A DNA stretch of 64,000 nucleotides from Haplodiscus bocki (taxonomy: Eukaryota). The DNA is taken from assembly GCA_965655095.1 (NCBI GenBank), contig OZ296649.1:135718001-135782000 (forward strand), written 5' to 3'. Each line of letters starts with the position of its first letter. The stretch's first letter is position 1. The translations under genes and the position numbers were made by a program. Below are positions 1 through 62,078 of this stretch, in pieces. The notes beneath the pieces were generated by a model. That model ran no database searches. It was not told the DNA's origin and saw only the letters and a list, made by a program, of their open reading frames with translations.

Positions 1-929
1 CCTCCTCCAGCTGGTGGTAGGGCAGGTTTTGCCCTCAGAATTCCCGCTTGGGGAGGCGCTGCCGACAGAATTGCTGCAGCGGGAAGCGGGGGAGGTGCTG
101 GCGATAGAATTCCTGTTGAGGGAGGCGGGGGAGGTGCTGCCGGCAGAACTCCTGCTGGGGGAGGCGGTGGAGGTGCTGCCGTCAGAATTCCCGCTGGGGG
201 AGGCGGTGGAGGTGCTGCCGTCAGAATTCCCGCTGGGGGAGGCGCTGCCGACAGAATTCCTGCTGCGGGAGGCGGGGGAGGTACTGCCGACAGAACTCCT
301 GCTGAGGGAGGCGGGGGAGGTGCTGCCGGCAGAATTCCCGCTGGGGGAGGCGCTGCCGACAGAATTCCTGCTGCGGGAGGAGGGGGAGGTGCTGCCGATA
401 GAATTCCTACTGAGGGAGGCCGGGGAGGTGCTGCCGATAGAATTCCTACTGAGGGAGGCCGGGGAGGTGCTGCCGACAGAACTCCTGCTGGGGGAGGTGG
501 TGGAGGTGCTGCCGACGGAACTGCTGGGGGAGGCGCTGCCGATAGAATTCCTGTTGAGGGAGGCAGGGGAGGTGCTGTCGACAGAATTCCTGCTGCGGGA
601 GGCGGGGGAGGTACTGCCGACAGAACTCCTGCTGAGGGAGGCGGTGGAGGTGCTGCCGTCAGAATTCCCGCTGGGGGAGGCGCTGCCGACAGAATTCCTG
701 CTGCGGGAGGAGGGGGAGGTGCTGCCGATAGAATTCCTACTGAGGGAGGCCGGGGAGGTGCTGCCGACAGAACTCCTGCTGGGGGAGGTGGTGGAGGTGC
801 TGCCGACGGAACTGCTGGGGGAGGCGCTGCCGATAGAATTCCTGTTGAGGGAGGCAGGGGAGGTGCTGTCGACAGAACTCTTGCTGGGGGAGGCGAGGGA
901 GATGCCATCCAAGAAATTTTAGACATCAT
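1..929 (-). CDS. Proline-rich tandem-repeat exon (units like [13 protein letters not shown])
   Basis: Acceptor cttacttcag|ATG at 930/929, phase 0 matching the donor at 5215; 309 open codons to the window edge; 27-39-bp repeat units. Confidence 0.8.
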   Translation of the reverse strand, partial: MMSKISWMASPSPPPARVLSTAPPLPPSTGILSAAPPPAVPSAAPPPPPPAGVLSAAPPRPPSVGILSAAPPPPPAAGILSAAPPPAGILTAAPPPPPSAGVLSAVPPPPPAAGILSTAPPLPPSTGILSAAPPPAVPSAAPPPPPPAGVLSAAPPRPPSVGILSAAPPRPPSVGILSAAPPPPPAAGILSAAPPPAGILPAAPPPPPSAGVLSAVPPPPPAAGILSAAPPPAGILTAAPPPPPPAGILTAAPPPPPPAGVLPAAPPPPPSTGILSPAPPPLPAAAILSAAPPQAGILRAKPALPPAGG

Positions 930-9900: not shown

Positions 9901-12900
9901 CAATTGGAACACGGGTGGTGGCGCGGGTGCACTAGGGAGCGCTGCGTGCATCATTTTAGGTGAAGCCATATTAGGAGCCGAAAAAAGCATAGATGCCGCA
10001 ACATTTACAGTTGGCCCAGTGAAGTCACTAGCTGTAGACGTGAATTTCGCTGAAACGTCTTCAGTTGGCATTGAGAAGGCGATACCTTTCGCACTCGGCA
10101 TCCGTTGGTCAGTTATAGCAGTTGGAGACATTGAAGCGTTGACTGACAAAGGCGAAGTACTTCTTTCAGTTGGGTCCCACGCTGCACGACGAATCCTTCC
10201 TGAAGTTGTAAAAAATCATGAAGATCTTCAAAAGATTCAATGATGGCATGTACACACCGAGTAATGAAAAGTGCATTTTAAAACAGTTTTCCAGAGCCGT
10301 TATTTAGAATTCTGCCCATTTTAATACGAGACAGTGTTTCTGGATTTGACAAATTATTTATGCATTTAAAAATTCTATTCATTTTAGTATACATCCGCGA
10401 GGTGATTTTAGACGGTAATGTAGACCACTTTTGGAATGAAATTATGATTTTTAGAAACGGTTATAAGGTAGAATTTAAATTAGCAATTTTTAAGCTAAAA
10501 TTTTAGTTGCCTCTATACTCGGGAGAACTCACACTGAAAAGCGCACAAAGTCCCACTTTAATCTACATACAATTTAATCCACGCTGGCTTTTTTCTACCA
10601 AAAGTAAAACAGGTTTAACCGGACTGGTTTACCAGTAAAAAAAACAACTTGTAGTTTTGATTAGTAATGTCTCAACTCTAACCTAAATTTTGATTCAAAA
10701 ATGATGATCAAATAATCACCCGGAAAATTCACAGCTCTTGCCGATCTGCTAGGAGACAACTTGAAACTTGTTCCAATTTCAGGTCCAACGTAGCTGTCTT
10801 TCTGACCCATTCCAACCATTACACCTAAAACAATTTTACTGTGCAAAATCGAGATTTCTTGCATCTTTCCATGCTGAAAACATAGACTTTAGCGTTGAAA
10901 GTAAAGAAGAGCCAACGACCCCCCTTGAAAAATCTTCCTGACCAATCTCGAAACGTCACCAAGTTTTTCTATGATGAGATACTCCTTCTAAGGAGGTAAA
11001 GTTTCTGAACAGGATTCGGCAAACATCACCTTATATCCAGGAAAACTATTCTGATTTATTGTTGGATTTGAGCTATTCTCATTTGTCATTAGCCGAACTG
11101 TTTTGGCAACCTGACTATTAAATTGCGGGCTGCTAGTTGATACTTGATGTTGCAGTTTAATTCCGCCTGCAGTTGATTAGTTCAGATTTCATCTTATATC
11201 GCAAACGTCTTATAAATCTATCCGAGCCAGTTCAAACTTTAAATCCAATCGGTAACTTTGTTAGTGCGAAGCTGATGACAAACGCCTGCTTTTGAGGTTT
11301 TTTTTAGATATTAAAGCCTTTTCTTTCTGTCAGGTCCAGGTAATATTCATTGCCGTTCGGAGGTTGACCGTTTACACAAGAACACTAGAGTCTGACGTCA
11401 AGAAATGCAAGTTTTGGACAGGATAGAAAAAGTGGGCATAAATCACTTCCAATTAGTGGCTTGACTGTTACCAGTTGTTCTGCAACAGTTACAGAGAGGC
11501 GAAGCTGCGCTTTCCATCTGCTTGCAACGAAGGTCAAAAATGAACAGACTAATTAATTACCCAACCACGAAAACAGCTCATTTTCGTGAACTTTTCCAAA
11601 TAGCAAAGTGTACAGAAATGTTTGAGCAGAAAATGAAATGGAAAATGGCGGTGTGCAGAATTGTTGATTTTCTACAATAAAGCGTTTTTGATTAGCAGCC
11701 ACTTATCCTTGCCGCAGAGTCTTTTTGGAATAATCTCTTCACTGGCCGCAAGAAAAAAATTACCAATTTGAAATGATTTTGCCAGGTATCTCCACACAAA
11801 TCAACAATGTTGTCCCATCATCCTAGCCACGTCATTGAAGGAAAAAGTCCTTTCAGAACATCTTCGTAAAATTTTCGACAGTGGATAGCATATCAGTCAC
11901 GTATACAGCAAACTTGTCAGATAAATTGTGTCTTCCTTATATTTCATTGACCACTTGACCCAAAGTCAGATGATCAGGAAGCTTTTTGGAGAATAGACTG
12001 TCGAGCACAACGCAAAATGGCCTGAACCGTCGGATGATATTCACAACATATTGATCCCTCTCGTTGCAAATTTCGTAGAGTTTTATGCAAAAAAAAACAT
12101 TTCTTTTGACTGCAATCCTCTATCGTAGCGGTAAGTTGTTTCTGGAATGAATTTGCAACGAGGGTTAGGTATGCTCCATGCAACTGCTCGGGTCTCGGGA
12201 AAGTCCCTCCTCTGACAATTTTTTTCAAGGAAATTTTGCATTTTAGTTGCTCTTTTGAGTCGTCCATTTAACGCCAAAAGTATTGCAAAAAAATCTTTCA
12301 GACAAGTTGATCTTTCGTTTTGGTTCGATAAAAATGTTGCGACTGAAACTTGTCGCAAACCAGGCAAATAGGATTTTCAGCTTCCGTTATCTTCTTCACA
12401 AGCTGGTTTGACCTTTTATGACCTCTATTGTTCTCCCTTTTAAAGATAATGGTTTATGGGAATACAGTTTGCATGGTTTTGTACCTCCATAATTGTAAAT
12501 ATCGTTCAGGTACTCTCAATAACAGTCCGCGGGTGTAACTACTGTGGGAATCTTCTGCGCTGCAAGATGAAATTGTTCGGATTCTGCAATTTATGCTGTC
12601 GATTTTCAAATATTATTTGAATTCCTTTAGTAATTTGACCGTTCATTCAGGTACTTCTTTAAAAATAAATTCACAGCAGTCTGAACAATTTCTATATACT
12701 TTCGTTGTTCGCGAGCTTTAATTTTACCTGCAAATGATGCGTTAAATCTTGAGAAATATTTGCTTATTCAATTTCTTTGTTGCCTCATTGTCTGACTCTT
12801 TTGTTGAAACTTTAAACTATCGCATATCGTTTTCTGAAATCCTACTGGCTGATTAAATAAATTTATGCTAATACAATAACATTTGACCGAACTTTTGCTG

Positions 12901-15900
12901 CCAAAAAAGGCTGCTAGCAGAATTGCGCTGTTCCTGCACTACCTGTAGCTGTAGCGGTACCGATCAAACCACTAGTTTCAATACACATCATTCAGTCGGA
13001 ATGTGTAAAGAAAGGAAATCATAAGACTCCTAACATCACCTTCTGCTTCCAGCTTTTTCAAAAGCGACTGAAAAAAGGAAGGAGACAGGGAGACCAGAGG
13101 AATGGGAGTTTGAACGTGAATTTGATGGTAGAGAAATTGAAGATAGATCAAACCTTGGTGTCTAGGTCGTCCAATCACGCTTCGGATCTCAACCATTTCA
13201 TCGCAACTTTCATCAGGAAGGTCTTCTTTCTGGGCCATTCTAGCCATTGGAAACCCAGCCTTTACTGTGTAAGAGCCAGAGTCAATCACAATAGTCTGTT
13301 TGCATTCTTGAAAACATATATATTCAGAGAGAAACTTAGGTATTATATTGGTTTTCGAAAATTATGACTTCTTTAGAAAACTAGTATACTATATCACGTT
13401 TTATCGAAAAAATAAGTCACAGTCCTGCCTATTTGTAGGTGCTGGTTTATGCAATCTCTCGGACACTCACTAGTAAAGAAATTTGATTAACGCATTTTCA
13501 ATAATAATTAAGATAATAATAATTTATCTGAATAACACCACATGTTATCTGAACATTCAACTGATTCAACTGACGAGTGTTTTTTTTGTAAGGTTTAAAC
13601 ATATTGACACTCCTGGAAAATTTAATCATCTGAGGCTCCTCTTCAGCGTGCTTAAGCCCTTTGGAAGTCTCTTCTAACGGATTGTTAGTTATCTAATTTA
13701 ATTTATTGAGTTATTTATATTATATACTGCAGATGAATTAAATTATTATAAATTATTATTGTAAAATATTTGCTTTTTTTTGGCCTGAAGATGATAGTGT
13801 CATTATCGAAACATGTTGTCGTAATTTAAGTTTTTGTTTCATTTATTTGGTTGATAAATATTTCAAACAAGGGTAATACAACAAAGACACTGAGGCGAAA
13901 CTGCTTCGCAACGCTTGCAGAAACGGAATACAAGAAACAAGTCATTCGCTTGATATTTAAAATAAAAACACTGATTCTCAAGCGGCAATGACGCAGTCAG
14001 TAGAGCATGTGACTGCAGCGCGAAAAGTTCGTCCTAGGTTCGAGCCTAGGACGCTCCCTCATCTTTCTGATCAAAATCTAGGAAGAACTGCGAGTTGTGA
14101 ACGGATTGAACAGAAAGTCCAGAGAAGCCTGTGCTATAACAGAGACCGAAACAAAGAGACCAAGAAAGACTTTCCAAGGCACATGCCCCCAAAGAGAAGG
14201 CCTTCACAATGGATGTCTGTGGTCTTTGATTTCTCTAAGACAAATCCCCAAAAATCGATTTCATTCCAATGAGCCCAAAACTTAATTTTTGAGGTATATG
14301 ATAACAGGGTAGATGTATTCGTCTCCGTCGGCAGTAGTCCTTAAAATTTTGATAAAATAGTAAATATATGAATATATTGTTTGTTGTCTAAGCTGTTGAA
14401 AAAAAAAACATTGTACTTTTTCTCTCAAGAAGCGCCGACAATTATTACTGTGTGCTTAACTTAAAAAGTTATCTGCAATACCGCCTGAAATCTGAATTTT
14501 CTGAATTTGAGCAGTGCTCTTGAAGTTTTGATGTGATTTTAAAAAAGACTAGATTACATTCAAGCATAGGCGTCAAGGATACTATGCATTATGGGGCTAA
14601 GAAATGAGCAGTCAAAAACGGAAAATTGAAAAAGCAGAAAATGGGGTGCGAATAAAATGAACAATTTATAAAGAAAAATTCCAACAAATGGGAGCACTTG
14701 AAAGTGAATGAAAGTAAATAGAAATGAAGGTAAGTAAAGAGACGTTCGTTCACTCGCTAAGTTCAAACAGAACGACATTACCTCGTGGTCCAAGTTCAAT
14801 CTTCATCACTCAGCCAGCTAGCCACGAATCGATTTCCGAAGATGCGAAAAAAAAACAGATTAAAATCAATACCACTTGAGTTAATTGCTTAATGCCTATA
14901 AATTCCAAAGACTTGACTGAGGAATTCGAATAAATTAAAAAAACAGGAAACACGTCACCGAAATTCCTCTCTCGGCTGTTGAAAAGTGGCTTCAATTTAG
15001 CCGTACATTGCAGCTAAGAACGAGAGTTAGCAGATGTTTAGTTTGCATAGTTAATGTAAATTTTGTATGATTTAATACATGGGCATTTCATTTGTCTTGA
15101 TGATTGTCTCCTCGTAGATACCGGCTCTTCCTATACTAGATCCGGGAAGGTGTGTTCATTTGCATTTCCTTTGAAGTTGGAGTTTGCAGTGTAATGTTTT
15201 AAGCTGTTACCGCAAATTATCGCATTGCTACTGTGTCTCTTGTTTTTACTTTCGTGTGCGAATAAAAAGTGTACTGGAGCCTACACTAAAAACAGAGCCT
15301 GCTTGAAATTAAAAGACCTTCTCACTTTTAGTGATCCGCTGGTCAAAAGTTGAGTCGACATACCCTCCCCTGAGTCGCAACACCAGGTGGAAAACATCAC
15401 CTGTCTGCACATTCAAATCATGCAATGTGACTGAATTATCATTCAGCTGATTGCCTTTGAAAACCAGTCGCTGCTGATCCAATGGAATACCTTCCTAAAA
15501 TACAAAACTCTTATTATTTCAGAAACTTTTAAGGCCAAAAGAGGACATCTTTGATACATCCTGCAAATTACATTTATGATACATTATTGAAAAACATAGG
15601 CATCAAGAGGCTAGACATAGCACTAAGAAATTAGCACAGTCAACAGACGCGAAGCGGAATTTCCCAATACATTTTGACTGGTCAGTTGAAATCAAAGATA
15701 TTGAGAAACAATTTAGACATAGCAGAAACTTGCTCAGTTTTACGTTTTTTACATTTCTCGAAGATTGGACGGCCTGATGGTGTGACCGGAAAAATCATGA
15801 TTGATAAATTAATTTTTTGATAGAGGGTGTGGCAAGTAGTTGACTCAAGTCGACTTTTTAGGACAAAAACTTGATTGACAAATGGTCTAGTAATTCTAAA

Positions 15901-18900
15901 AGTGTCAATCACGTCTATGGTCAGACTGCCTCATAATCAAAAATTGATATGCCACGTCTTTTCGGGTTATTCTATTTTGCCGCCCAATGTTTAACAAAAT
16001 TGCACTGTAAAAAAAGGCAAAAATGACCGATTACCTGCCACAGTGTCTCGCAATCAGAAAGTGATCTGCGAATCAAGTTTTCTCAGGTTAAGCCACTTCG
16101 CCTCCCAACGTTTCGCAGAGTAAAAAACGCGCAAAAAAATAAATGTCAAAAAGAGACCGTTTCTGACCGTTTACACCAGAAGACTACACACTCTGATGCC
16201 GCCAAAAAGTTTTGGGAGAATGGATTAAAAAACTAGGCACAAGCTCGTTTCAATACACATTCTTCCCATCACTCAAAGGAAATTGAGCAAAATTCACGAA
16301 AAATTAGGGACTACTTGAACGAGAAAATATCACTCGAATGGTGTGACAAATTTCAGAAAAAAAATTGAACAGTTAAGGCACTTGAAAATGAATGAAGTAA
16401 AGTAAATGACCGACCGTAAAAAAGACTTTCACTCACTTAATGCTTACAAACAACTGAAATGAAATATATGGAAGATATGCTGGAATTCTAGACACAGAGG
16501 CAAAGCAGCTGAACTTCGCAACATATTCTGACTTACCCGTTGAAAACAAAGATGAAATTAACAGACAAAAGTCCTGAGAGACATTTGCACCTTGATCGGA
16601 GACATGATTGACTATTCTAAAAATACTATACCATGTGTCTATCGAAAGTTTGTTCAAAAAACCCATTGAGACCAATACCTGTCCCAATGTCTAATAGTCA
16701 AAATTTGATCTGTCTATCATGTTTTTCAAGAATCGCGATTTTATAGTTTAAAAGCTTTACACATTAAACAACGCAAAAATGAACAACACAAGAATCCGAA
16801 AAAAAGGTAACCTGTAAAAAATTTCTAGCTCTCAAAATGGCTCATATCAGTCAACAAGACTTCAAAACAGTTTCAAAAAATTCTCATCTCACTTTTCAAT
16901 GATGAGGACATGTGAATCTTACTGAAACATTAAAAAAGTTGCATAATTTCGGTTAAATAAGTGTCAACTTTCATGATCTGAACCTAAATTTTCACAATTT
17001 GAGATTCAGGGCATGTGTCAATTTTAATGATTGACAGGAGGCACGTGCAGACTTGAACGAAAATCTGATATCTTCTTTACTGCTACTAACCTTTTTGAGT
17101 TTTGAGAACTTGAAATTTTTACATGTAACATTTTTTGGGGACAACTAATACGCTGCCCTCACTGTCTCATTTTCAACAAACTCCTGCTGACAAGAGGCCG
17201 TTTACACTAGATGACTACATTCTCGGATGAGGTCAAAAACTGCCAGTATTGGACAAGAAAAAAAACTATGCTTGAGCAGGTTTCCAATACACATTTTTGT
17301 GTTTCAGTCAGAATGTGTAAAAATGAGAAATTAATCAAAGGAACACAAAAACGTCTTGTCTAATGCGCTTCAAAAGTTCATTGTTGCCCCCAGTTTCAGT
17401 TTCACTTCTCACGTCGAAACGCAATTCTGTGATTCAACTCTTACCACTTGTTCGATTGCGTTTTTGAGGTGGTGTACAGTTTCGTATCTTTTGAACGTCA
17501 CTTCAAACTTTCTACCCGAGAGTAGAACCACTTTCACTTTCACCTCTCGCTCTGTCTCCGGTACCAGCCATCTCTCCAACTTGTCCTTATATTTCACATC
17601 TTCGCCACTTCTCAGTCTGAAACATTCTCTACTATTACGCACTCGGCTAAAATCCGATGAATCCCAATCGCTAGAAAAACAAGAGACGGAGTTTTGAGAC
17701 AGGACGTTTGAGACTCGCAATGAAAATTTAGGCTAATCCTCAAAATGCTGTTAAGGCAAAGAATTTTCCGACTAATAAAATTTAAATTTACTGGTATGGA
17801 ATGCATAATTGCGATTATTAGAGAAAATGAAAAGACTCGGGCTCTAAAAGTATTTTTTCGTACAGATGCCTAGGCTTCTAACAGCTTAAATGAGATGCGG
17901 CTGTAGTTGCGGGCAGTTTCAATTCGAGAGCAACTTTTAATCGAATAGTCCTCTCAGTAGCTGCGAGAAGGAGACTTCGAGAAATTTCGACGTTGCAATG
18001 TGTTAGAGGCCAAAAACCTTTCCATGCCCAAAGAAGAGTCGTTAAATGCAGCAATTTACCAACAATGTGCTTGCAATAGTTTTGAATACTTCTCGGTGGG
18101 CAACTTGCATTCAACTCATCTGTTCTATTTCGAGAAGTCCTCAATTATCTTGACCACTATCATATCATGACATCCTACAAATTAATTTGGTTTGGCTCGG
18201 TACTTCTCTCACAATACTTCTGAAAGTTACTCTTCCAAAACTTCGAGGTCCGTTCTCATCCTTAGCTCTTTAGCAGTCTGAGCTTTTTGTTAGTTTAACA
18301 TTCAAGTTCCATTTTGGTCCTCATGTTAGATTACAACCGCAAACAATTTCCAAAAAAAGGAGAAACAATAGCAAAGGATTTGCAATGATCAAGAGCCTGG
18401 ACTATGTGGAAACTCGCTTATCTAGGGAATCGCTGTAACTTTAGGTTTCCGAAGCTGTTTGCTTCAATGCGACTCCTATTCAAGGATGTGACAATTCGGA
18501 TCAAACAAATTTTTGATGTGATCTACTGTAGTTTATGGTCATGGAACGTAGGTAAAGAATAGTATGTGTTTCCTTTATTTCAACTTCAAAAGATTATAAT
18601 ATTTCATCCATTACTTTGTCTTCCGAATGATATTCAGTTTTTCTTCGTTCAAATAGAAAAGAAAACAACAAAGGATTCACGGATGCTATGCTTAAACAGT
18701 TAGAAATTGAACAGTGAAAGGAGCAGAGCAAGCTAATTCGAAAAAAACAGACAATATTGAAAAATCACATAAAAAAAGGCCAAAACTAGAGAGAAAGCTT
18801 GGATGACTTGGTATCCACAAGCAAGAGAGCTCACTACTTTGAACCCACTCGAAAGTAAATTGAATTACTTGGAATACCCTTCAAAGAGAACGAAAGTAAA

Positions 18901-21900
18901 AAAGACTTTGATTAGCGGCACAAAATTATAATCGAAAGGCAGGACAATCACATCCGAGATGTCAGAAAATGAGATTAGACAGACTATTGTACTCACTTCG
19001 ATATCCCTTTTTCTTTCACGCAGATATCCCTTCCTATTCCATCCGATTCTCCGTTCGGTGTTCCGGTTATTTTTTCAGTTAGCAAACAAGCGAAAGCCTT
19101 AGACCTATAGATTTCGCTATAAGGGTTCGAGCTGATTATCCCTTACAATTTTAATCGCATGAGACGAGACTTCAAAGTCTCTTCGAAGTTTTAATCCCAT
19201 TTGTCCGAGCGCAGATGATAATTTGTCTGAGGTGACCTTTAAAAGTTACGTAACAAAAATCTGAAGGTCACCGCTTTCGTTTTGAACACATTGTTATAAC
19301 TAAGCGTGAAACCACTCAAATCAATGCGTGGCCATCATTTGTTTTAATTGTTAAGCAACCAACACCAGCAAAGTCATTTTTACAATTCGTTCAGCATTCC
19401 GGTTGAACAGAATTGAAAAGTTGTACTTCGACCAAAAAAATTCTGTTGTTTGGTTTCCAATCAATTAATTTAATTGCTTTAACAATTCGGGCAGAACTCA
19501 AAATCGGTCCAAACAACTTTGCTTCATATTTCGCTTTGGTTTGGCCGGAAACCTCGTGTAGTATTCGAAGAAACACGGCGTATTGTTTTGAGCATTTGTT
19601 TCGAAAATCTCCGTAGTAAAAAACCGATAAGAGTTAGCTGACGAAAAAACCAAGCATGTAAATGTGTCATTAAATAATTTCTGTAACTCAAAGTCAAAAA
19701 CCGCCGCATTTTACACTAAATTGATGTTTTGATGTTGAATCCTGGTGGCAGGACAAAACACCCAAACCCAAAATACCCAAAGTTCTAAAATACCCAAGCC
19801 CAATTCATTCAGTCCCAAAATACCCAAGATTCAAATAAGTATACCAACTAAACAATTAACAGCCTCTCAACGCTAAGAGTTTCTAGACGCTACTGATTAC
19901 GTAGGTTTATACATTGCTTCAAAATGGATGCTAGACAGAACCAAATATTTTAGAAGGGGACAAAACAGCCGATTTTGAAAACGGGACAAAATTGCCGATT
20001 TTGATAATGAGACAAAACCGCCGATTTTAAAGTGGGACAAAACCGCCGATTTGTAATAATACAGATCACTAGTCTTTGCAAAGATAGAAGTTGTTCAAGA
20101 TTAAAGCGTCTTGACCTAATTATCGATAAGTAGCAATTAAATTACCAACATACCAATGAAAAGGTTCTACTCCAGAATACCAAACCCAAAATGACTAAGC
20201 CCAAAATACCCGAAGACAAAAAAATTGACTGAAATTCAAATTTTTCTAATATTAGCTTAAAATTCTGGGCGGGCACGAACAGAATATTTTGAAAATTGAT
20301 AATGCCAATATCTGCAAACTAAATTTTCTGTCACCTAATGAAATGCCAATGAAACAAATACTACAAAAACAATCTATTTTAATTTTTGCTTGTTCAGAGG
20401 AGTTCGGTACAGAAAAGATAGGGAGGGGGTGGGTACTACAAATTTAGGTTAAATGGAAGCGGGAGGTTTGATAAAATCTTTGTAGTTGGCATATTCCAAA
20501 ATTTATTAGCCGCAAAATTTGAAGGAAATTGCATTTAGGTAGAGGTATCCCAGTTATTATTTGTAATTGGTAATATAATTGCTAATTATCGATAATTAGG
20601 CCCAGACGCTTTTATCAGAGAAACAATTTTGATGGCAGTTCGTTAACTTTTACATAATCAGCGGTTTAGCCCCACTTTCAAAATCGGCCGTTTCGTATCA
20701 TTTAATTTGAAATCGGCTGCTTTGTCCTGCTCCCCTTCAAAATATTGGTGATGTCAGATTAAAATAACACATGTCAAAATATTTGCAGAAAATTACCCTG
20801 AACAGAAAATCATTTTTGAAAATTTAACATTTTGTTTTCGATGAAAAATAAACGGAAACTTGCATATCCAAAATTCCGTATTTCTTGTCCAAATATTTTC
20901 ATGCAAATAATTTTCTGTTTTTGAGATTTTGGAATTAGCATATTTCAATTTTATTAGTTCTTTTTTCTAAGTGGCCGCGCGTACTTTTCAATTTTTGTCC
21001 TATCCAAAAAGACAAAAAATGATTTCAAACACTTTTTTGAAAACATTAAAGTGTAACCTACAAACTTTTCGGCACTGAGACGAAACTTTGATAACCTTAT
21101 TATTTTGCACCAGACCGGTAAAAAGCACGGATTTGAGCCTTGACGGCCTTATCTGCCTTTTTCGTTTTTGTCGTGAATTTTATTGCATAAGTTTGAGTTT
21201 TCAAAAACCTTAAAATCCAAAAAAGTGAGGCTTTTCAAAGTAGATGCTAGATGTGGTAATAATTCTATTTAGTGTATTCATAATCGTGTATAGAATTTTG
21301 TTGAACAGAGCACTAATATTTAGCATCATATTTACGATATCAATTAAGTAATTACGCAACAGTCGAGTATTTCGGGTCCTTTACTTTTACGACGCTTGTA
21401 AGAATTTAAATGGTATGGTTGTTTAAATCTTGGGTATGTTGGCTTGGGATATTTTGGGACTTTGGGTATTTTGGGGTTTGGTATTTTGGGGTAGAACCGT
21501 TGAATCGTGTTTTTTCCTCAAAATACATCCATGAACTAAAGGGATACTTTCATTGCTTAAAATGAAAATTTTTCCTGGCAAAATTCATAGGCAACTTCTG
21601 CCGCTATTAGAACATAAAAGTGCGCAATCTCAGACAAATTCATGTGCAATAAGGTCTCAGATTCATGGCAAAAAGCCTTTGATACTAACGTTTGTAGAGT
21701 ATTGAAGATAAAGGAGGCATGTTTCAAATGCTCCTCAGACAGTTTTTGCAAAGTTGAATCTTCAAGCTGGGCCATTGTCCTCAAAACTTGGTTACCAATT
21801 GATTCTATCTGTTCAGTTCTGTCTAGACATGACATCACGTCAATCGAATCCGCTCCGAACTAAATCAAAAACAGTAAAAAAATTCTTCGATAAAATTCAG

Positions 21901-24900: not shown

Positions 24901-27900
24901 AACGGTGATAGGCTTCATACTATTTGAAGACAAGTTTGACAAGTTATACATTCCTTCATAGGAAACTATTGAGGACTTTACGGAGATAACTTCCGATCAA
25001 TTCAGACGATAAAGCCAAAACATCGATAGTGCTCCAACTACTTAGCCTATCCAGCCCAGCCCAAGCATTCAAACTGGAACAATTTCTCCAGATTTTCTTG
25101 AATGATATCATTCTCACGGCATAGGCAAGGAAACTCCGTTGCCCAGTTACTGCGCCAAATCAGAATTTAAACTTTGAAACCACCTCAACTTTCGCCGAAC
25201 ATTTCCACAATTACTGTTTTTCAATGAAAGCATGTTCAAAAGATGAAGAGAAAACATAGCCGCCCAAGGCGGATAGGACTTCCGAAAACTTTTAAGATAA
25301 TCATAGGGTCGTTCTTCAACCCTTATTCAATCTTCCCATGAATTGGAATAAATGAGTTCAAAAAGTCCGGGGTTCACACTTTTGTAAGTATACTGACTGG
25401 GGAACAAGAAAAAAATTCATTGTCTTTTTATTTGCGCGCCCTCGCCGCAACTACGATGGTCCGTGTGGTCCCTTCTCTAATGCCAAGCAGCTTTCCTGCC
25501 TTTTTGTAAATTTTTCATTTTTCGCAAGAAATTCTTATTTTGGATCGGGTCGCAAATGTAGTACCAAAAAACCTAGTAACACAATAAAGACTTCGTAAGA
25601 ATAAAATTTTCCCTAGGATCTAATAAATTTTGGGTTAAAAGTAACACACTAGGAAAGCAGTCTAAGTATATGAAGGCGCTATTAAAATTGTATTCCAAAA
25701 AATCATTGAGAAGCACAAGGATAACTTGGGGATTATTTAAATCAAATTTGCAGTCTGCCCACGCCAGAAGTCTAGTATTAACGATGTCAGGATTCGATCT
25801 GAACTAATCAAAGGAATGATCTTGAAATTTGTTTTTGAAATACGAGTAGCACCGCTGGTTTCCAATTTTTACGACATTGTAAGGAAAGTGGAGCGGAGCC
25901 TCTTTAAACCCGAACACTGCCAAATTCAGGGTCAATTACCTATTCGATGGCCTTTCCTGATTTTCGCAGAAACTTTACGACAGAGCTAGTCTATCACATA
26001 CTAAAATTTCGTTTCGGCCCGACATTTCGTCGATTGGTTTTTCGGCAAAATAAACCTGAAAATCGAGCAAATTTTGGTTAATTTGGCAAAACGTTGTCTA
26101 TTGGTAGTCATTTTTTCCCTCATGTAGGCCTCCAAATCATTTACATTTTGTACTGGCATAAAGAGTGGGCTTTGTTCATCCGATACTATTTTTTGGGTGC
26201 GGTCAGAAAATGTTTCGATAGTTTATTTTGCGATTGAATCTAAAACGTGGAGATATTATTGACTATTTAAAACATTTTTCATTTAAAACTTTAATCATAA
26301 ATTCCCGAACCTAAATCTAAAGTTGACTCTAATTTTCCCATCGAATAAAAATGAGACTCCAATCCTTTACATACCAAACTTCGTTTGCAGTCAGATTTTT
26401 TGACACGTTTTTATTTCAAAGAAGGTCCAAATCGGGCTGATTTCGGCTATTAGAAGACCAATTGTCAAAATTTATCCACTCAAATTTAAAATTAGAGCCC
26501 AAAAAATAATAGGTGGCCTAAAAAATATCGGTATTAAAAGGCCTCCGGATTCATCTGGAGGCCTTTAACAAACCGAAGCCATTTAGTGCAATTTCAGTGA
26601 AAATTGGATCTCTTTATGACCAATTGGAAAGTTTGGTTCGATAAAATCCTGCAAGGTGTTCGAGTAATCAACTATCCAAATTTTGAATCACTCTGGTTCA
26701 AGTCAATTCTCGAAAACTTCAAGCTGGAAAACGCTACCTTGTCTCTTTTCTCCACGGCAACAAAACTTGTGAAAGGCGTGATCACTTGATGACGTAGGCT
26801 GAGATCAATGATGGTCTGTTTGAGCTGTTTCTTCACCATTTCATTGGTTGCTTTGTCATTATGTAAGATCGCATTAGTCTCCCAGTCTCGAATCACGGCC
26901 CTGATACAACGGATTATCACAACCTTTTTTACTGAAGAAAAACATTATTTCAGTTCAGAAAAAATCCAGTACATATGACTGGCTATCCAAAACATAAGTG
27001 TAAGGCTAACTTTGCGATATTTTCCACATCCAAAATTTTACCAAAATCAAATCAAATGGAAGCATGTATCTGCTATAAGAATCGCAAATATTCTGAAATC
27101 ACAAAAATTTGGAATCCTTATATCACCTGATGCTCAAATACTAGCAAATATGCCTTAAATTTGTCCACAATCTGCTTGGAATTTTACTTTAGTAGTAGTA
27201 GCATTTCACTCAATTAATCGGCAATTTTGGGAAAAATCAGGATGCAATTCCGTCGTAAGCTTCACCGAAATATTTACTGGAAGTAGCCCAGAAAAAAATT
27301 TCAAAACTGTAGATATAACACTTGATTTTCTAACACTTAGAAACTGTTACGTGCGTGTTCAATTTCTTTAAAGAAATAGAATGTGTGAAATTTACATTTA
27401 CTCAAATTCCAAAGACAGCACTGATTAATGAGACTGTTTTTCAGCGTTTCGGATGCACTCCGATTAAATTCCACTTTCAGAAGAAAAACTAGCTTTCTGA
27501 AAAAATACGAAGCGCTTAAAATAGTTCAAAACTCGGATTCGAAGCCACAATTCAGCAATTAGATGGATCAAAACGTGTCGAAAAAATAGTGCACATCAAT
27601 TGAAGTATAGGTACCTCTCGATTAGCCAACTATTCGCTGAGCTCCTTTGCAGCTATTTACACACTGAATTACCACCAAATTGGCTTTACTCAAGAGATTG
27701 GAAAAATTGAGAAAAAATTCGTAATTATTTTGGAAAAGTCCCTAGAGAAAACCGTGAAAAAAAATTTGACTGTTCAAGCTATGTACTACAGCTTTCCTGC
27801 AACGCATGAAACAAAAACCACTTCAAATTAAAACCGCTACTGCAAATTGAAACCGCTTGTGACCATAATGCCCACGAGATTGTTGAAAAACGACTGTTCT

Positions 27901-30900: not shown

Positions 30901-33900
30901 AAAAATGCAGTTTTTCGAAGGTCAGAATCAATAGTCAACGGAGATAAAGCTCGATGTCACAATAAAACAAACAGAAAGCAAATAAAATAATTGATCAAAT
31001 TTTTTGCCCTTAATATACTTTTGTAGTTTACATGTCATTTTTTGTAGTTTACAAATCTCTGGAAAAGCTAAGCATGTAAGCATGTTTAACATCAACTTCT
31101 GAAACTCCGACTTCATGTTCTTTAAGAACTTTGAAAGATTTAAATGTTAAAATACTTAGCTTCGTTGTTCCAACATCTCTGCTTTAGAAGTCGCAGAGCT
31201 AGAACCCTAATACGCGTGTTGCTAGAACACGAAAACTAACGGTACCTCCCATTTTGAACGTAAACATATTTTTTTTTGTGAAAATAACGGGAAGAAATCA
31301 GCAGGTACCTGAATCAAACCAGAGCCATCCAGAGGATTATAAACTGGTCGATTTTCTTTTTCATCATGGAGCACCCACTGAACAGAAACTTTATTCAGAG
31401 CAAGTTGGAAGCACTTTTTGAATTGCATCTTAATTTTTTCCATCCATGACGACTTGTGAGAAGTATCGAAAAACTCGAAGAAACCACCAGCTTTGTTAGC
31501 GATAAGCCTCATCGTGTGTTTGTCGCAAGAACTAGAAACTCCGTTGGTAAACAACCGAAATTGGCTATCTTCTGCGCCTTCGAACACTCTTAGTATCGAG
31601 CTTTGCACGTTTTGTGTCAAATGACCGTCGCTGAATAGCATCAAAACTGTTTTCAAGTTGACTTCCTTTTTCGATCGCAGCAAAAGGTTGGAACCATCTC
31701 CTTTTCCTTGGAAGAGGGCTGATAACATTCCAAGAGGTTTCCCCAATTCGGTCCCGCCCAGCGCTTCAAAATTGGACGCAAGTTTGCCCAGAGTCGCAAT
31801 TGCCGACTTCTTTGAAGTTTCATCCGCTTTCAGAGACTTGTCAAAAACTTCGCGGTAATTAGTTCCGAAAACTATGACGTTGAAAAGTTGGTTTTCTTTC
31901 AAGTTCATTATTGTCAAACACGCTAATTGTATTGCAGTGAAAAAAGCACGGTCATGTTTCATTGAGTTTGAGAGATCTACGAGAAGTATAATCTGATTGG
32001 TTGAAAGACTCGTCTTCGATTGGCTGGCTTCAAACTGAGGGTAGAAAGACAGCATGACGGCTTCGTCGTCAGAATTATCAGGCAATCGCTCGACCCACAT
32101 TCTGGGTTTGTTAACTTCTTCTAAGTGGATCAGCAACTCGAGTCCGTCTTTTCCAAGGCCTTGGTCATTTTCTGATGCTCCATTCGGAAGGGCACATACC
32201 GCTTGAGTTTCGGTACGCTGAAAACATAGAGCTTTTGAAAAGATTAAATTAGGGGTATACTCTCAACTTACTGAGTAAAAAGCATGTATCAATGGAGCCA
32301 ACACCTTCATACCAGTAAACAGACTTTCAAGTTTGAAACTGTTTGAAAACCGGTCGTTATTTAAACTCGTTTTAATTTCTCAGACTTTCGTTGCCTTCAT
32401 TTAGACTTAGTTAATAATCCAAGTGACTTCAAAAAGATTCAAGTGCACTTGGTGCTAAACGTTGAATTCTCGAAATGGTTGAGTGCCCGCACTAAAATCA
32501 ATAAACAAACCCAAGCTACCAAACCATGTGATAAATGAAATCTCAAAGACTATTTTGTTTAACCCATTATACATTTATTTCTCCACGTAACATGCCCTAG
32601 TATTCCATACACTTGATTTATGTGATGCCTTACAGTTTTCTGCTTTCTTTGCCTATGAGTGCACTATTCTTCTTGAAATCTTGTTACATCAAGGATCGAA
32701 ATTTACAACTCTTAGTGCTTAAATAAGTAAGAACTTTTTAAAGTCTATGAAATCGGGCATACCTTAATTTTGAGTTGCGGATGCGTCCTTGAAGTGAGCT
32801 GTTTGATTGCCGATCCCATATTTGCCTGCAGTTCAAATGTAAACTTATGTCGCACAGACTTATCTTCAGCATTTCCGGCGTTAACGGAAACCGAATCCAA
32901 CTTCGTTTGCAACTTCATTTCTTCTAAAGATTTGATACTCCAGGGTGCCACGGCTGCGGGCAACGAAAACTTGACTTGAGACCCTTCAACTTGCAATTCT
33001 GTCACATACGTTATTTTTATAAGCACCGTCGCTTGCGGGGGCAAATTGCCCACTGCGACCGAAAACACATTTGGGGTTTCCTTTTCCTCTTCCATCAAAT
33101 AAGCTCCATGACCTTCCTCAATTGCTTTCTTGTACTCCTTCCGAGCCGCAACTTTTTCTTTGACTTCGCCCACAATGTGTTTTCCGTTGATGTAGGCTTC
33201 GAACCCGACAACGGTGCAAAACTCGTCCAATGGAAAAACGTATTTAGCTTCGATGTTAGAAGACGTGCTATTGTTTTTGTAGACTTGCATCACGACGACG
33301 CTGGCAACAAGGTCAACCATTTTCGCCCGGATATGAACTGCCTGTAGAGGGATCGAATCCCGTAAACCGCTCTGAGGTACAAGTCCTGCTTCGCTCATTG
33401 GAGGCGTCAGAGATGAAAGATGCTCCAATTCTGAAATAGCTTCCTATTGGTCAAATTCGAAAGCTCTCCAAGGGGTCGAAACGTCGCGCTTTTTGGATGA
33501 AAGTTGGACTAGACAAAATTTTGATGAAACCTACAACTTTCAATTGACTCAATTGAATACAATTATTTGCCGACTCCAAATAATGACTGGCAAAATTTGA
33601 TCCAGAGAATTCAGTCAAATAAATTTTTTCAAGTTTGCTAATGGGTATATAAATTCACTAGACCGGTGTGAAATTGGAAAGCCAATTGAGAACTAACTTC
33701 TTTCATGAAAACTATTCTATTTGTTGTTCAATGCCATTAAATCAGCAACCAGCTAACATCAAATTCTTGTTTCTTGCAAAAGTTTAACTCAATAGAAAGC
33801 TATACAAGGAACTAAACTCACTCAAATCTTCAGCCTTCCGCAACTCTTCATTCCCACTTTCTTTCTTCCTGGTACTGTCACTGTCATCCAATAGTAACTT

Positions 33901-36900
33901 TTGCCCAACTTTTCCTTTCGCTCGCTTTTCCCCAATTTTCCCAGTATCATCTTTCAGCTTGAGTTGTACCAGGTACTTAATGCTGATCTGACTTGTATCA
34001 TAAACTACAACTTCTTGCCCGGATTCAAACTCTTTGGAGCCCAGGGCACTGACGACACTGTTGTACCCGTCAGGTGCTTTCACGAAGTCAATTTTCAGGT
34101 CATCAGCACTGTACTCCTTGCCGCAAGCTACGTCACAAACTAGCAAGTAGCGGAACTCGTTTTGGGCACAAGAAGTGTATTTTAAACTGGTTGTGCATTG
34201 GGGTGAAAAGTAAACGCCTGCTCCCAATTTGCCAAAGTCTGTCAGGTTTATTCCGAATTCGTTGGTTACTATGTTTGGCAGCAAAAGACCCCTACAAGTT
34301 AAAGGTTTGATTTGATGGATTTATTCTTACAATGAGATTTAATAAAATTAGTATACTGTAATGACATTGAAACAAAGATATAGGTGCAACAGATTCCGGG
34401 AAACATTTTCCGACACTTCCGCATGATAACAACGTTTTCCACACATTCTTCTCCCTTTTACCACTTTGCTGAAAATTGGCCCTTGTGGATCTTGACTATA
34501 GAAACACTAGAACTCTTATCTTTCTTTTTTTAACCGCAGATCTAAAAATCATATTGAATGAAGAAACATCTTACGTGTCACAGTCTTATGTTGTAGATAG
34601 AATACGGTGAACATGACAATATCCTGAGAAAGAATCGATTTTGAAGTCTCGCAAAAACTGGACCCAAAACTTGATATGAGATAACACCGACTCCAATAGG
34701 CTTAAGTAGAACTTCATATGATTTGAATGCCCAAATTTCTAGATGCAGGACTTCGAATATGACAAATAACGTCAAAATAGCAGAAAAAGGACCGTTTTTC
34801 ATGAATTCTTTGACATTAAAACTGCGATGAAACAATTTTACACAATCAAAACTTCGCAAGTAAAACTTTGGGGTCTACAAGATAAGTCAATGATAAACTC
34901 AGTTGGTTCGAAGGCCTATGTGTCAAGATAGAGGTCTTCGGAAATGAAAAAGTAACGGCCAAAAAAACTGCGATTTCCATAAGTCTTCCGGGAAAATCTC
35001 ATCGCAGCCAAAAATAACTATATGATAAATTAGAGTCTCTCCGCTATGTGAACACAAAACATGCTAGGGGAGCAGATGCTAGAATAGAGAAATTAAAGTT
35101 GATAAAGTATTTCAAAATAGGCAAAATAAGCTCGATTTTCAAAATTCTTTTCCAAAAAAAACTATTAAAGAGATTTTGGATCACAATGAAAAGGCAGTAG
35201 GTGACAAAATGGGGTCTCCTTGTTAAATCTGTGCAAAAATCAAGTGACTTGGAGACTTATATACCAGGATGCATGACTTAAAATTGATAAGATACTTCCA
35301 AAAATAGCCAAAAATCCCGATTTTCAAGTTATTATCGCAAAAAATCTGTCGCAAAAAAAACAAGACCGCAACCAAAAATTATGCGAACTATTGGAGTCTG
35401 TTTATTCTCCTTAGCTAAAATTCAGGTGACTTCGAAATAGCTCCTCCAATAAGACGAAGCATCGTCAAAACAAAATTTAAAAGAAGACATGTTTTGGTCA
35501 ATATGATCATCATGTCGAAAAAAGTGGACAGAGGAATATTCATGTAAGAAATAAATAAAACTACGGTAGAGTTCTCCTAGAACAATACGAACTACTGTAA
35601 AAACGTAGCATCAAATGAAGATGATCATACTATTTCCGGGAAATGAACAGTGGGTTCTTCTCCACAATAAAAAGGGCCTCTAAGGTCACAAGAATAGACT
35701 CCATTGAAAACCAATGAAAGAACCACGTGCGTCCATTTACTTTAGATCTTGTTCACCCACGATTAAGAAAATGATACAAGCGGGAGAGCCGTTGCGACCA
35801 TCCTGTCATCCTGGTTCCAAGATGCTGCTCCATCAGTCCCAAATACTGGGCACTGCACCCAGGACATGTAGTTTCATGAACCACTTTCAATCTCAAACTC
35901 ATTGGAACAGGCGCTTTTGAACTTGATAGCATCATCTGATGTTTTTTGAGTTGTGGGAATGACGGTAAAAAGCCCGCAACTTTCCTCTGACTCTAAAATC
36001 TTGACAAAACAATCTGTGTGCGAGCCACGATTGTCGAGAGAGAAACCCCTAGCGCTTTTCCGCAATCAGATGTCGATTTAGGTTTCTCGAGGGAATCACC
36101 ATAGCACTTGTACATAGAAGCTTCAATTAGAGAGTTGTAAAATTCTGGTGGCCATTCATTGGTCTACAAAAGCTTTTTCAAAACTTCGAGTTTTTAATGA
36201 AACAGTACCTAGGACGACCAAAATTGGAGAGACCAAAGGGCCTTGCTGGCGGTAAGTACCAAAATTTACCGTACTGTTTTTTTCCGAAAGGCAATCGAGC
36301 TAGTCATTATATTCAAATAGCTCAACAGCTTTGTTGATTGTTTCCTTCAATGGGATCATTGTCAAGGGTGAATTCATGTCGAGTGAAGCAAAATTTTCTC
36401 CACGACGGAGTGCAAGATCACGTAATTGTTTCGCATTTGTTTTTGTTCACTAATGAATGCGAGATGGCTTCAATTTCTCAGCAATTCGTGCAAGTTGATT
36501 GCCAAGCTTCTCATATGAAGGTCTCGGCATGGAGACGGTAGGCCTCAAGGGGTTGATTTTGTACTTTAGCGAGTCCGTAAAGATGTACAAGCTGTCCTCC
36601 AATGGATCGAGCAGCTTCGATAAATTCTGTTTCTCTTTATATTTAGAAGTTGGATGGTCACTCGATCAATTCAGGCCAAAAAATGGTTCCATGCGCTAGC
36701 GCGGCTTTTCACCTAAATATTTTTGGATTGTATGACCTCAAGAAATTTATCAAGCTTTCCGTTGTAGTTTTTCCTTGTTAGTAATAAAAAATGAACATCC
36801 TCTATCAGAGGAAAATGCTACCAAGTCATCACGTTTCGGAAAAGCAGAAGCAGTGAGCACCATGCGGTCGACCTTGAGCTTCGTGCAATTCCGATTGTTT

Positions 36901-57030: not shown

Positions 57031-57089
57031 TTATAAGGAATAAATTTATTGAATTAAAAATATCTATTCAATAAAACATAAAAAACAAA

Positions 57090-62064: not shown

Positions 62065-62078
62065 TTATACAACATAAT

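What the first reader, a model, noticed from the sequence alone, without database searches (positions are those of the whole stretch)
15326..17670. Internal ubiquitin domain keeps its processing/activation tail but has lost six of seven lysines
Seen: residues 68-76 (HLVLRLRGG, with LRLRGG at 15380-15363) plus R42 and L8 are identical to ubiquitin, while overall identity is only ~45%. K6, K11, K29, K33, K48 and K63 are replaced; only K27 remains. Established: DUBs cleave linear fusions after LRLRGG, and R72 is the ubiquitin-versus-NEDD8 E1 determinant. Inference: cleavage would yield a PARP-VIT-vWA-Ubl with a free C-terminal diglycine that could be conjugated to targets as a chain-terminating, enzyme-bearing modifier. 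With the 15326 donor, the released C-terminal part starts with Tyr (GG|YVDST), a destabilising N-degron residue. Cleavage would also separate the catalytic half from the presumed vault-anchoring C-terminus.
Basis: partly seen in the sequence, partly recalled or inferred. Interest (0 to 1): 0.86.

Follow-up and report, generated by a model that had tools for sequence, protein, structure and literature searches.

The report
Built-in ubiquitin module of a vault-PARP gene
A real ubiquitin-like domain ending in LRLRGG sits in frame inside an invertebrate PARP4 (vault PARP) gene, but relatives show it is one of several old built-in copies of hub proteins that are mostly protected against cutting, so it is more likely a fixed docking or bait surface than a releasable modifier.

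Summary
Two minus-strand exons (17670-17445, 15494-15326) encode a ubiquitin-fold domain that is 34/76 identical to this genome's own ubiquitin. L8, R42 and H68-G76 are kept, and K27 is the only canonical lysine left.

No RNA data exist, but a relative's contig (about 75% identical) has the same exons in the same order and phases. It supports the 15326 donor, which joins in frame to an actin N-terminus/D-loop module, so the Ubl is internal.

The same module occurs after the vWA domain in PARP4-like proteins of a sponge, a ctenophore, molluscs, Euglena and Diplonema. It sits beside 14-3-3, actin, Hsp70, synaptobrevin and ribosomal P-stalk modules; Perina 2014 had listed 14-3-3, actin and ubiquitin-related ones.

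- 13 of 18 GG-bearing modules have Pro right after GG, a junction known to resist deubiquitinases.
- K29, a ubiquitin-fusion-degradation acceptor site, is replaced in 20 of 22 modules.
- Only strongly diverged modules, this one included (GG-Tyr), lack the Pro.

The family therefore looks selected to keep ubiquitin in the chain, uncut and stable. Cleavage at GG|Y remains possible here but is untested. Conjugation of a PARP-bearing modifier is unlikely.

The parts
38253..38603 (-). Open frame holding the first part of the PARP catalytic domain (LFHGT, the His of the H-Y-E triad). Exon ends were not mapped.
   Evidence: Pfam PARP E=3.7e-5. The best PDB match is human PARP4, aligned over LLHGS.
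33787..34320 (-). Open frame holding the second part of the PARP catalytic domain (GVYFS Tyr, QEVVVY Glu).
   Evidence: Pfam PARP E=4.6e-10. Human PARP4 8swy at E=4.7e-22, with Tyr and Glu aligned.
32748..33443 (-). VIT domain exon (open frame).
   Evidence: Pfam VIT E=7.5e-36.
31225..32262 (-). vWA domain exon (open frame).
   Evidence: Pfam VWA/VWA_3. The query for one search found the PARP4 family. It is 75% identical to the relative L013.
26720..26908 (-). Conserved post-vWA exon ([12 protein letters not shown] motif).
   Evidence: tblastn hits from about 85 PARP4-family proteins. 78% identical to the relative.
21690..21859 (-). Last conserved exon before the Ubl. Its donor AC|GTTAGT is phase 2.
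   Evidence: 75% identical to L014 9674-9850. Same donor and phase in both species.
17445..17670 (-). Ubl exon 1. It has a phase-2 acceptor (tctag|C), a 42-residue linker, then Ubl residues 1-33 (17543-17445). The donor G|GTAAGA is phase 0.
   Evidence: Pfam ubiquitin positions 1-35. Collinear with L014 12227-12412 in the same phase.
15326..15494 (-). Ubl exon 2. It encodes Ubl residues 34-77 (EGIP...HLVLRLRGG) plus a 12-residue linker ([12 protein letters not shown]). The donor A|GTGAGA follows 15326 and is phase 1.
   Evidence: (E=1e-10). The relative L014 14509-14682 keeps RLRGGY, shows an in-frame indel in the tail and has a phase-1 donor.
15363..15380 (-). LRLRGG tail of the Ubl, followed by Tyr (15362-15360).
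13154..13306 (-). Actin-like module, exon 1 ([14 protein letters not shown] ... IGRPRHQG). Its acceptor is phase 1 and joins in frame to the 15326 donor.
   Evidence: Pfam Actin E=0.0043. tblastn with oyster PARP4 P0011. Collinear with L014 15085-15240.
10720..10824 (-). Actin-like module, exon 2 ([13 protein letters not shown], the D-loop), with a donor G|GTGATT.
   Evidence: tblastn with P0011 and P0017 at 88-94% identity. Collinear with L014 18946-19035.

Best explanation
The two exons encode a genuine ubiquitin-fold module. It is spliced in frame into a PARP4 (vault-PARP)-like gene, after the PARP, VIT and vWA domains and directly before an actin N-terminus/D-loop module.

It belongs to an old, family-wide set of copies or fragments of abundant hub proteins built into the variable region behind the vWA domain. 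The set includes ubiquitin, actin, 14-3-3, the Hsp70 substrate-binding part, the synaptobrevin SNARE motif and the ribosomal P-stalk tail.

Most likely the module stays in the chain. It would work by non-covalent recognition of its preserved ubiquitin surface (L8, V44, H68, V70, Q40-R42 and the RLRGG tail), acting as a docking or bait surface carried by the enzyme.

Loss of the canonical lysines, K29 and K48 above all, is best read as protection of an uncleaved in-chain ubiquitin from ubiquitin-fusion-degradation-type ubiquitylation. It is not best read as a device for chain termination.

Shown here: the domain, its in-frame position, its conservation, and the family pattern (Pro after GG, K29 lost). 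Inferred: that it is not cleaved in this lineage, and what binds it.
For: Domain identity.

Internal, in-frame position:
- A relative's contig has collinear exons with identical splice phases on both sides of the Ubl.
- The relative keeps RLRGGY, and its tail differs by an in-frame 2-codon indel.
- The downstream actin exons are conserved.

Selection: between the two species the Ubl has pN 0.28 against pS 0.67, so it is under purifying selection but changes about twice as fast as the vWA domain.

Family context:
- The Ubl lies after vWA in PARP4-like proteins of Dysidea, Mnemiopsis, Mercenaria, Ruditapes, Nucella, Potamilus, Sinanodonta, Biomphalaria, Plakobranchus, Euglena and two Diplonema transcriptome ORFs.
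- In the sponge the order is Ubl, then an actin fragment, then synaptobrevin, matching the Ubl-then-actin order seen here.
- Other modules found were 14-3-3 in 11 of 71 C-terminal parts, actin in 4, Hsp70 in 3, synaptobrevin in 3 and P-stalk in 3.

Signature of an uncut, stable ubiquitin:
- Pro follows GG in 13 of 18 modules, against a local Pro frequency of 12% (binomial p=6e-9, not corrected for phylogeny).
- K29 is replaced in 20 of 22 modules and K27 is kept in all 22.
- All 13 GG-Pro modules are 53-79% identical to ubiquitin. All 5 non-Pro modules, this one included, are 36-51% identical, a complete separation (Mann-Whitney p=8e-4).

Established knowledge:
- Ub-Pro junctions resist deubiquitinases (Bachmair 1986 and Johnson 1992/1995, from my own knowledge).
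- K29 and K48 of a fused ubiquitin are the Ufd4/TRIP12 acceptor sites (PMC3564756).
Against: - In this lineage the residue after GG is Tyr, in both species, and a Tyr junction is cleavable in ubiquitin fusions.
- The RLRGG tail is kept even in the most diverged modules. This suggests the tail has a function of its own, possibly as a cleavage site.
- There are no transcript or protein data.
- The module counts are not phylogenetically independent.
- The binding partners are unknown.
Confidence: 0.5

Rival explanations
1. Processing site, the core of the first reader's idea. Host deubiquitinases cut after LRLRGG|Y. This would split the protein into PARP-VIT-vWA-Ubl with a free GG, and a C-terminal actin-like/proline-rich part starting with Tyr, a destabilising N-degron residue. 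It would resemble ubiquitin-ribosomal fusions, FUBI-eS30, or ubiquitin inserted in pestivirus polyproteins.
For: - The tail L71-G76, R42, L8, H68 and V70 are identical to ubiquitin and I44 is Val.
- The P1' residue is Tyr in both the window and the relative, not Pro.
- RLRGG is retained in all five diverged non-Pro modules.
- Divergent, lysine-poor Ubl fusions such as FUBI-eS30 are known to be cleaved (my own knowledge).
Against: - The family-wide Pro after GG and the loss of K29 argue that the ancestral role needs an uncut module.
- Non-Pro junctions occur only in modules at or below 51% identity to ubiquitin. That fits relaxed need for protection once deubiquitinases no longer recognise the fold.
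- F4, T7 and K48 have changed, and there is an inserted residue in the 52-54 loop.
- There is no experimental evidence.
Confidence: 0.27
2. Enzyme-bearing modifier, the full first-reader idea. After cleavage, the roughly 1400-residue PARP-VIT-vWA-Ubl is activated by UBA1 through R72 and conjugated to targets as a chain-terminating tag.
For: - R72 and the GG are present.
- N-terminally extended ubiquitins such as GFP-Ub can be conjugated (my own knowledge).
Against: - It requires the cleavage step, which is itself unproven.
- Most homologues cannot expose GG, because they carry Pro at P1' or end in RGS.
- Six lysines remain, so the module is not chain-terminating.
- Between the two close species the module is only 54% identical, which is poor for a surface that would have to fit E1, E2 and E3.
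Confidence: 0.05
3. Non-functional inclusion. The Ubl exons would be an exonised ubiquitin pseudogene fragment, or a separate small gene wrongly joined to PARP4.
For: - There is no RNA support.
- Long, repeat-filled introns surround the exons.
Against: - The frame stays open at 45% identity to ubiquitin.
- The intron position (33|34, phase 0) is shared with the relative and differs from the intron in this genome's own polyubiquitin.
- Splice phases are conserved on both flanks.
- The exons show purifying selection.
- Transcriptome-derived Diplonema and Euglena ORFs carry the module in frame.
Confidence: 0.04

Closest known systems
PARP4-like (Clade 5, vault PARP) proteins with appended domains, as catalogued by Perina et al. 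2014 (PMC4245714)
   Same: The core is PARP-VIT-vWA with extra C-terminal domains. That paper already lists 14-3-3 (dictyostelids, Acanthamoeba, lancelet, sea urchin, Capsaspora), actin, and 'ubiquitin-related domains' in two Acanthamoeba proteins.
   Different: That paper only lists domains. It does not describe the LRLRGG-Pro junction, the K29 loss, or the Hsp70, synaptobrevin and P-stalk modules, and it does not report the ubiquitin module in animals. The present copy is a diverged variant with Tyr after GG and only K27 left.
[quoted passage not shown]
   Same: Ubiquitin is held in the chain because the junction resists deubiquitinases. K29 and K48 of the fused ubiquitin are the Ufd4/TRIP12 acceptor sites (PMC3564756; Ub-Pro resistance is from my own knowledge).
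   Different: Those are engineered, N-terminal and unstable. The PARP4 modules are natural and internal, and they have lost K29, which should spare them from that pathway. This window's copy has Tyr rather than Pro.
Cleaved ubiquitin-like fusions: UBA52/RPS27A, FUBI-eS30 (FAU), and host ubiquitin inserted in cytopathic pestivirus polyproteins
   Same: A Ub or Ubl ending in GG is followed directly by another polypeptide. FUBI is diverged and lysine-poor. The pestivirus insert is internal and marks a processing site (my own knowledge).
   Different: In the cellular fusions the Ubl is N-terminal and the partner is a ribosomal protein. Cleavage is proven for them but not here.
Integral UBL domains of multidomain proteins (RAD23, parkin, USPs)
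   Same: An unprocessed ubiquitin fold used for non-covalent docking through the I44 patch (my own knowledge).
   Different: Those domains have typically lost the LRLRGG tail. Here the tail is strictly kept.
Integrated decoys of plant NLRs and protease 'tripwires' of NLRP1/CARD8
   Same: Copies or mimics of host target proteins are built into a defence protein. The comparable region of mammalian PARP4 (exon 30) is the only part under positive selection and was proposed to contact pathogen factors (PMC4038475).
   Different: This is a functional analogy only. No immune role, effector binding or cleavage has been shown for any PARP4 module.

Membership tests
PARP4 / vault PARP (Clade 5) | PARP catalytic domain with the H-Y-E triad, closest to PARP4 | tested here: met
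   Pfam PARP matches on two exons. The best PDB hits are human PARP4 (8swy, 8sx1, 11jf). His (LFHGT), Tyr (GVYFS) and Glu (QEVVVY) align to the human residues.
PARP4 / vault PARP (Clade 5) | VIT followed by vWA after the catalytic domain | tested here: met
   VIT at E=7.5e-36 and VWA at E=3e-10, on consecutive exons of the same strand. The top full-length hits are annotated PARP4.
PARP4 / vault PARP (Clade 5) | N-terminal BRCT domain (animal PARP4) | tested here: inconclusive
   The upstream open frames 40280-40681 and 39054-39512 gave no Pfam hit. Small exons were not searched.
PARP4 / vault PARP (Clade 5) | C-terminal major-vault-protein interaction domain; vaults present in the organism | tested here: inconclusive
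   A profile of the conserved C-terminal block of 55 homologues found nothing in window 1-27000 or in the 20 kb fetched downstream. The stretch 135688001-135698000 was not fetched. An MVP gene does exist in the genome (MVP_shoulder E=2e-32).
Ubiquitin family fold (PF00240) | Sequence match over the whole beta-grasp domain | tested here: met
   Exon 1 matches profile positions 1-35 and exon 2 matches 32-72. 44.7% identity to the genome's own ubiquitin.
Conjugatable ubiquitin-like modifiers | C-terminal Gly-Gly that is free or freed by processing | not testable with these tools
   GG is present but internal, and 13 residues plus at least two more exons follow it. There are no RNA or protein data.
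Conjugatable ubiquitin-like modifiers | GG conserved and exposable in homologues | tested here: not met
   13 of 18 GG modules are followed by Pro, two modules end in RGS, and two tandem first copies lack GG.
Conjugatable ubiquitin-like modifiers | Activation by an E1 (R72 for UBA1) and conjugates in vivo | not testable with these tools
   R72 is present. There is no biochemical test.
PARP4 in-chain ubiquitin modules (pattern defined here) | Position after vWA; K27 kept, K29 replaced; RLRGG tail | tested here: met
   window K27 = K, K29 = A, tail LRLRGG.
PARP4 in-chain ubiquitin modules (pattern defined here) | Pro immediately after GG | tested here: not met
   The window and its relative have Tyr. 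This is shared only with other modules at or below 51% identity to ubiquitin.

The most novel reading that the evidence does not exclude
The variable region behind the vWA domain of PARP4 may be an array of integrated baits. These would be stable in-chain copies of the host hub proteins that pathogen toxins and effectors bind, use as cofactors or cleave: uncleavable K29-less ubiquitin, the actin N-terminus/D-loop, 14-3-3, the Hsp70 substrate-binding part, the synaptobrevin SNARE motif, the ribosomal P-stalk tail and EF-hands.

On this reading the vault-associated ADP-ribosyltransferase, and with it the vault, acts as a sensor or trap for such factors. In this lineage the GG|Tyr junction could serve as a protease tripwire.

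This would link three things: the invertebrate and protist domain collage, the positively selected disordered exon 30 of mammalian PARP4, and the long-open question of what vaults do.
Probability: 0.15. Interest if true: 0.9.

Novelty: new variant of a known kind. Interest (0 to 1): 0.6.

Why it matters
PARP4 and the vault particle have had no agreed function for decades. This gene shows that the ubiquitin module is an ancient, selected part of PARP4 and not a curiosity of one genome. It is present from euglenozoans to sponges and molluscs.

The module carries a clear molecular signature: the LRLRGG tail kept, Pro after GG, K29 lost and K27 kept. That signature fits a ubiquitin meant to stay in the chain without being cut or degraded.

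It sits among other hub-protein modules, in the same region that evolves under positive selection in mammals. This gives concrete, cheap experiments:
- test whether the junction is cut;
- find what binds the modules;
- see what happens when Pro or K29 is changed.

These experiments could show what PARP4 recognises. For the specific claim of a conjugatable enzyme-bearing modifier, the comparative evidence is mostly negative.

Tried and rejected
- RNA evidence. The only four public runs holding the locus are genomic contigs from one study. Laid on 12400-18000 they cover the introns continuously and give no splice joints, only repeat-derived ones. The donor choice therefore rests on comparison alone.
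- Word-index search with the exon 1 open frame found nothing.
- Donor after 15364 (GG|GTATGT) was rejected. It is phase 2, incompatible with the phase-1 acceptor at 13306, and the GT is absent at the homologous place in the relative.
- Donor after 15318 was rejected. It is phase 0 and a weak site (GTCTTT).
- Read-through to the stop at 15312 as a short isoform cannot be excluded.
- The exon 21859-21690 looked to me like a 14-3-3 remnant, since such a remnant precedes the Ubl in four homologues. A profile built from those remnants does not hit the window (best E=0.65 elsewhere), so the idea was dropped.
- The search for the C-terminal MVP-binding block found nothing.
- No conserved coding blocks were detected beyond actin exon 2 between the window plus 20 kb of fetched flank and the relative's next 10 kb. 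The 3' end of the gene is therefore undefined.
- dN/dS values: synonymous sites are saturated (pS 0.67-0.78), so only the contrast between pN and pS is used. My extraction of the actin exon in that script was out of frame, and that row is void.
- Literature searches for PARP4 with decoy, integrated decoy, or synaptobrevin/actin/ubiquitin architecture found no prior description beyond Perina 2014.
- I found no open-access source stating the Ub-Pro rule. It is cited from my own knowledge.


Full report
**What is in the sequence**

On the minus strand an exon runs from 17670 to 17445. It begins after a tctag acceptor and ends at G|GTAAGA. A second exon begins at 15494, after tttag.

Joined in phase 0, they encode a 77-residue ubiquitin-fold domain. 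Pfam ubiquitin matches exon 1 at profile positions 1-35 (E=6e-5) and exon 2 at positions 32-72 (E=1e-10). phmmer aligns exon 2 to ubiquitin residues 34-76 of many solved structures.

I compared the domain with this genome's own polyubiquitin unit, taken from locus L007.
- Identity is 34/76 (44.7%), with one inserted residue.
- L8, R42, H68, V70 and L71-G76 are identical, and I44 is Val.
- Of the seven canonical lysines only K27 remains: K6V, K11R, K29A, K33V, K48N, K63T.
- LRLRGG lies at 15380-15363.

There is one caveat. The domain still has six lysines, at positions 2, 4, 12, 18, 27 and 46.

**The gene around it**

Upstream on the same strand are open frames with these matches:
- the two halves of a PARP catalytic domain (38253-38603 and 33787-34320);
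- VIT (32748-33443, E=7.5e-36);
- vWA (31225-32262).

The closest solved structures to the PARP exons are human PARP4, and the H-Y-E residues align. A phmmer search of 1.8 billion representatives with the vWA exon returns the PARP4 family. Full-length animal PARP4 proteins score about 40% identity, from sea urchin, bivalves, Lottia and Hydra. The genome (1.5 Gb, 36% G+C) also encodes a major vault protein.

**Is the Ubl really internal, and which donor is used?**

No RNA data exist. The only four public runs with this locus are genomic contigs.

The best substitute is a contig of a related species, with 75% protein identity in the vWA exon. I walked along it in three steps (loci L013, L014, L018). 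It carries the same coding blocks in the same order: vWA, the 26.9 kb, 23.6 kb, 22.8 kb and 21.8 kb exons, Ubl exon 1, Ubl exon 2, and two actin-like exons.

The splice phases agree between the two species.
- The exon before the Ubl ends AC|GTTAGT (phase 2) in both. The Ubl exon 1 acceptor supplies the third base in both, giving an open frame.
- After GG the relative reads YIDPT--AIPDKS against [13 protein letters not shown] here. The difference is an in-frame two-codon indel.
- Both species have a phase-1 donor in the conserved AAAAGTG stretch. Here it is A|GTGAGA after 15326.
- The next conserved exon starts with a phase-1 acceptor in both species. Here it is ttcaag|AATGC at 13306.

The donor after 15364 has no counterpart in the relative and has the wrong phase. 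The donor after 15318 is phase 0 and weak. The most likely product therefore continues ...[31 protein letters not shown]...

What follows is the first ~55 residues of actin, split by an intron at the classic actin position after Q41. It includes a 20-residue stretch identical to the actin D-loop.

I could not define the 3' end of the gene or find the vault-binding C-terminal block.

Between the two species the Ubl is 54% identical, with pN 0.28 against pS 0.67. It is constrained, but it changes about twice as fast as the vWA domain.

**The family context changes the reading**

Among the PARP4-family proteins and a second search, a ubiquitin module lies after the vWA domain in these organisms:
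- the sponge Dysidea;
- the ctenophore Mnemiopsis (two copies);
- the molluscs Mercenaria, Ruditapes, Nucella, Potamilus, Sinanodonta, Biomphalaria and Plakobranchus;
- Euglena;
- two Diplonema species, as transcriptome ORFs;
- several unnamed eukaryotic contigs.

In the sponge the order is Ubl, then an actin fragment, then synaptobrevin. The Ubl-then-actin order is the same as in this window.

A Pfam scan of 71 C-terminal parts shows that the same region holds other modules:

| Module | Number of the 71 parts | Examples |
|---|---|---|
| 14-3-3 | 11 | full domains in dictyostelids, a fragment in lancelet |
| Actin N-terminal fragment | 4 | Hydra, Nematostella, mussel, oyster (a flatworm copy appeared only in the local profile search) |
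| Hsp70 substrate-binding fragment | 3 | |
| Synaptobrevin SNARE motif | 3 | |
| Acidic ribosomal P-stalk tail | 3 | |
| EF-hands | 2 | |

Perina et al. 2014 had already listed 14-3-3, actin and, for Acanthamoeba, 'ubiquitin-related' domains on PARP4-like proteins (PMC4245714). The architecture as such is therefore known at catalogue level.

**The signature of the ubiquitin modules**

I aligned 22 modules to ubiquitin.
- K27, the buried structural lysine, is kept in all 22.
- K29 is replaced in 20. The two exceptions are the two modules that end in RGS instead of RGG.
- Of the 18 modules that keep GG, 13 are followed directly by Pro. The Pro frequency over the next eleven positions is 12% (binomial p=6e-9, without phylogenetic correction).
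- Identity to ubiquitin separates the two classes completely. All 13 GG-Pro modules are 53-79% identical. All five non-Pro modules are 36-51% identical: this window, its relative, Biomphalaria, Plakobranchus and one unnamed contig.

Two pieces of established knowledge bear on this. A Ub-Pro junction is the one junction that deubiquitinases hardly cut (my own knowledge; Bachmair 1986, Johnson 1992/1995). K29 and K48 of a fused, uncleaved ubiquitin are where Ufd4/TRIP12 start the degradation chain (PMC3564756).

The simplest reading is that the family keeps ubiquitin in the chain. The module is protected from cutting by Pro and protected from fusion degradation by loss of K29. Once a module has diverged far enough from ubiquitin, the Pro is no longer needed.

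On this reading, the wholesale loss of canonical lysines in the window's copy is the far end of a family trend. It is not a design for chain termination.

**What remains open**

In this lineage the residue after GG is Tyr in both species. The RLRGG tail is kept even in the most diverged modules, so the tail probably has a role of its own. Cleavage at GG|Y, by host enzymes or by a pathogen's LXGG-type protease, is therefore not excluded.

My odds are:

| Reading | Probability |
|---|---|
| Uncut docking or bait module | about 0.5 |
| Processing site | about 0.27 |
| Conjugated enzyme-bearing modifier | about 0.05 |
| Non-functional inclusion | about 0.04 |

**A wider idea, marked as speculation**

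In mammals the only part of PARP4 under positive selection is a disordered exon between the vWA domain and the vault-binding end. It was proposed to contact pathogen factors (PMC4038475).

The modules found here lie in the corresponding region. They are all hub proteins that bacterial toxins and viral enzymes are known to bind, use as cofactors or cleave (my own knowledge). An 'integrated bait' role would fit both facts, but nothing tested here shows it. I found no paper proposing it.

**Verdict**

The gene model with the 15326 donor is supported by comparison. The interpretation as a releasable, conjugatable modifier is mostly not supported. The instance is a diverged variant of a known but little-studied PARP4 architecture, and the family-wide GG-Pro and K29 signature is the most useful new result.

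Noticed in passing
window 13306-13154 and 10824-10720 (minus strand): An actin N-terminal module follows the Ubl directly. It is split by an intron at the classic actin position after Q41. A 20-residue D-loop stretch ([20 protein letters not shown]) is identical to actin and conserved in the relative. The same fragment occurs in PARP4 of Hydra, Nematostella, Mytilus, oyster, Macrostomum and Dysidea.
   Followed up: partly
window 3-995 (minus strand), running off the window start: A 331-residue open frame of proline/alanine-rich repeats (AAPPPPP... units) lies on the same strand downstream of the actin module. It may be a further exon of the same gene, but I could not show this.
   Followed up: no
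window about 53000-63700 (minus strand): A run of long open frames looks like a Polinton/Maverick-type element. There is a protein-primed-type DNA polymerase B motif (YYTDTDS, about 53.97-54.03 kb) and a P-loop ATPase (GPSFSGKT, about 61.1-61.3 kb). This was observed only.
   Followed up: no
window 13896-14082, 15766-15952, 16514-17261: The introns flanking Ubl exon 2 hold high-copy repeats. Genomic contig depth there is 10 to 70 times that of the flanks, with many repeat-type joints.
   Followed up: no
L007 (G000:C2:73987293-73990454): This genome's polyubiquitin gene has an intron inside every repeat, after G53 (QLEDG|RTLSDY). That position differs from the 33|34 intron of the PARP4 Ubl.
   Followed up: no
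L001 (G000:C11:18385886-18389098): A 361-residue open frame holds three tandem ubiquitin-like units. The second ends in LRLRGG and is followed directly by MQIY. The last ends in HLILRNNV without GG. This is another diverged ubiquitin array in the genome.
   Followed up: no
proteins P0260, P0263, P0264, P0266, P0267, P0269, P0280: Alpha-2-macroglobulin/TEP-like proteins fused to ubiquitin units occur in Balamuthia, Anaeramoeba and unnamed protists. This is a second case of ubiquitin joined to a protein class known for 'bait' regions.
   Followed up: no
proteins P0136, P0085, P0089, P0090, P0072 (dictyostelid PARP4-like): In these proteins a full-length 14-3-3 domain is followed, some 500 residues later, by the last 20-40 residues of the acidic ribosomal P protein. 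That tail is the peptide bound by translation GTPases and by ribosome-inactivating toxins.
   Followed up: partly
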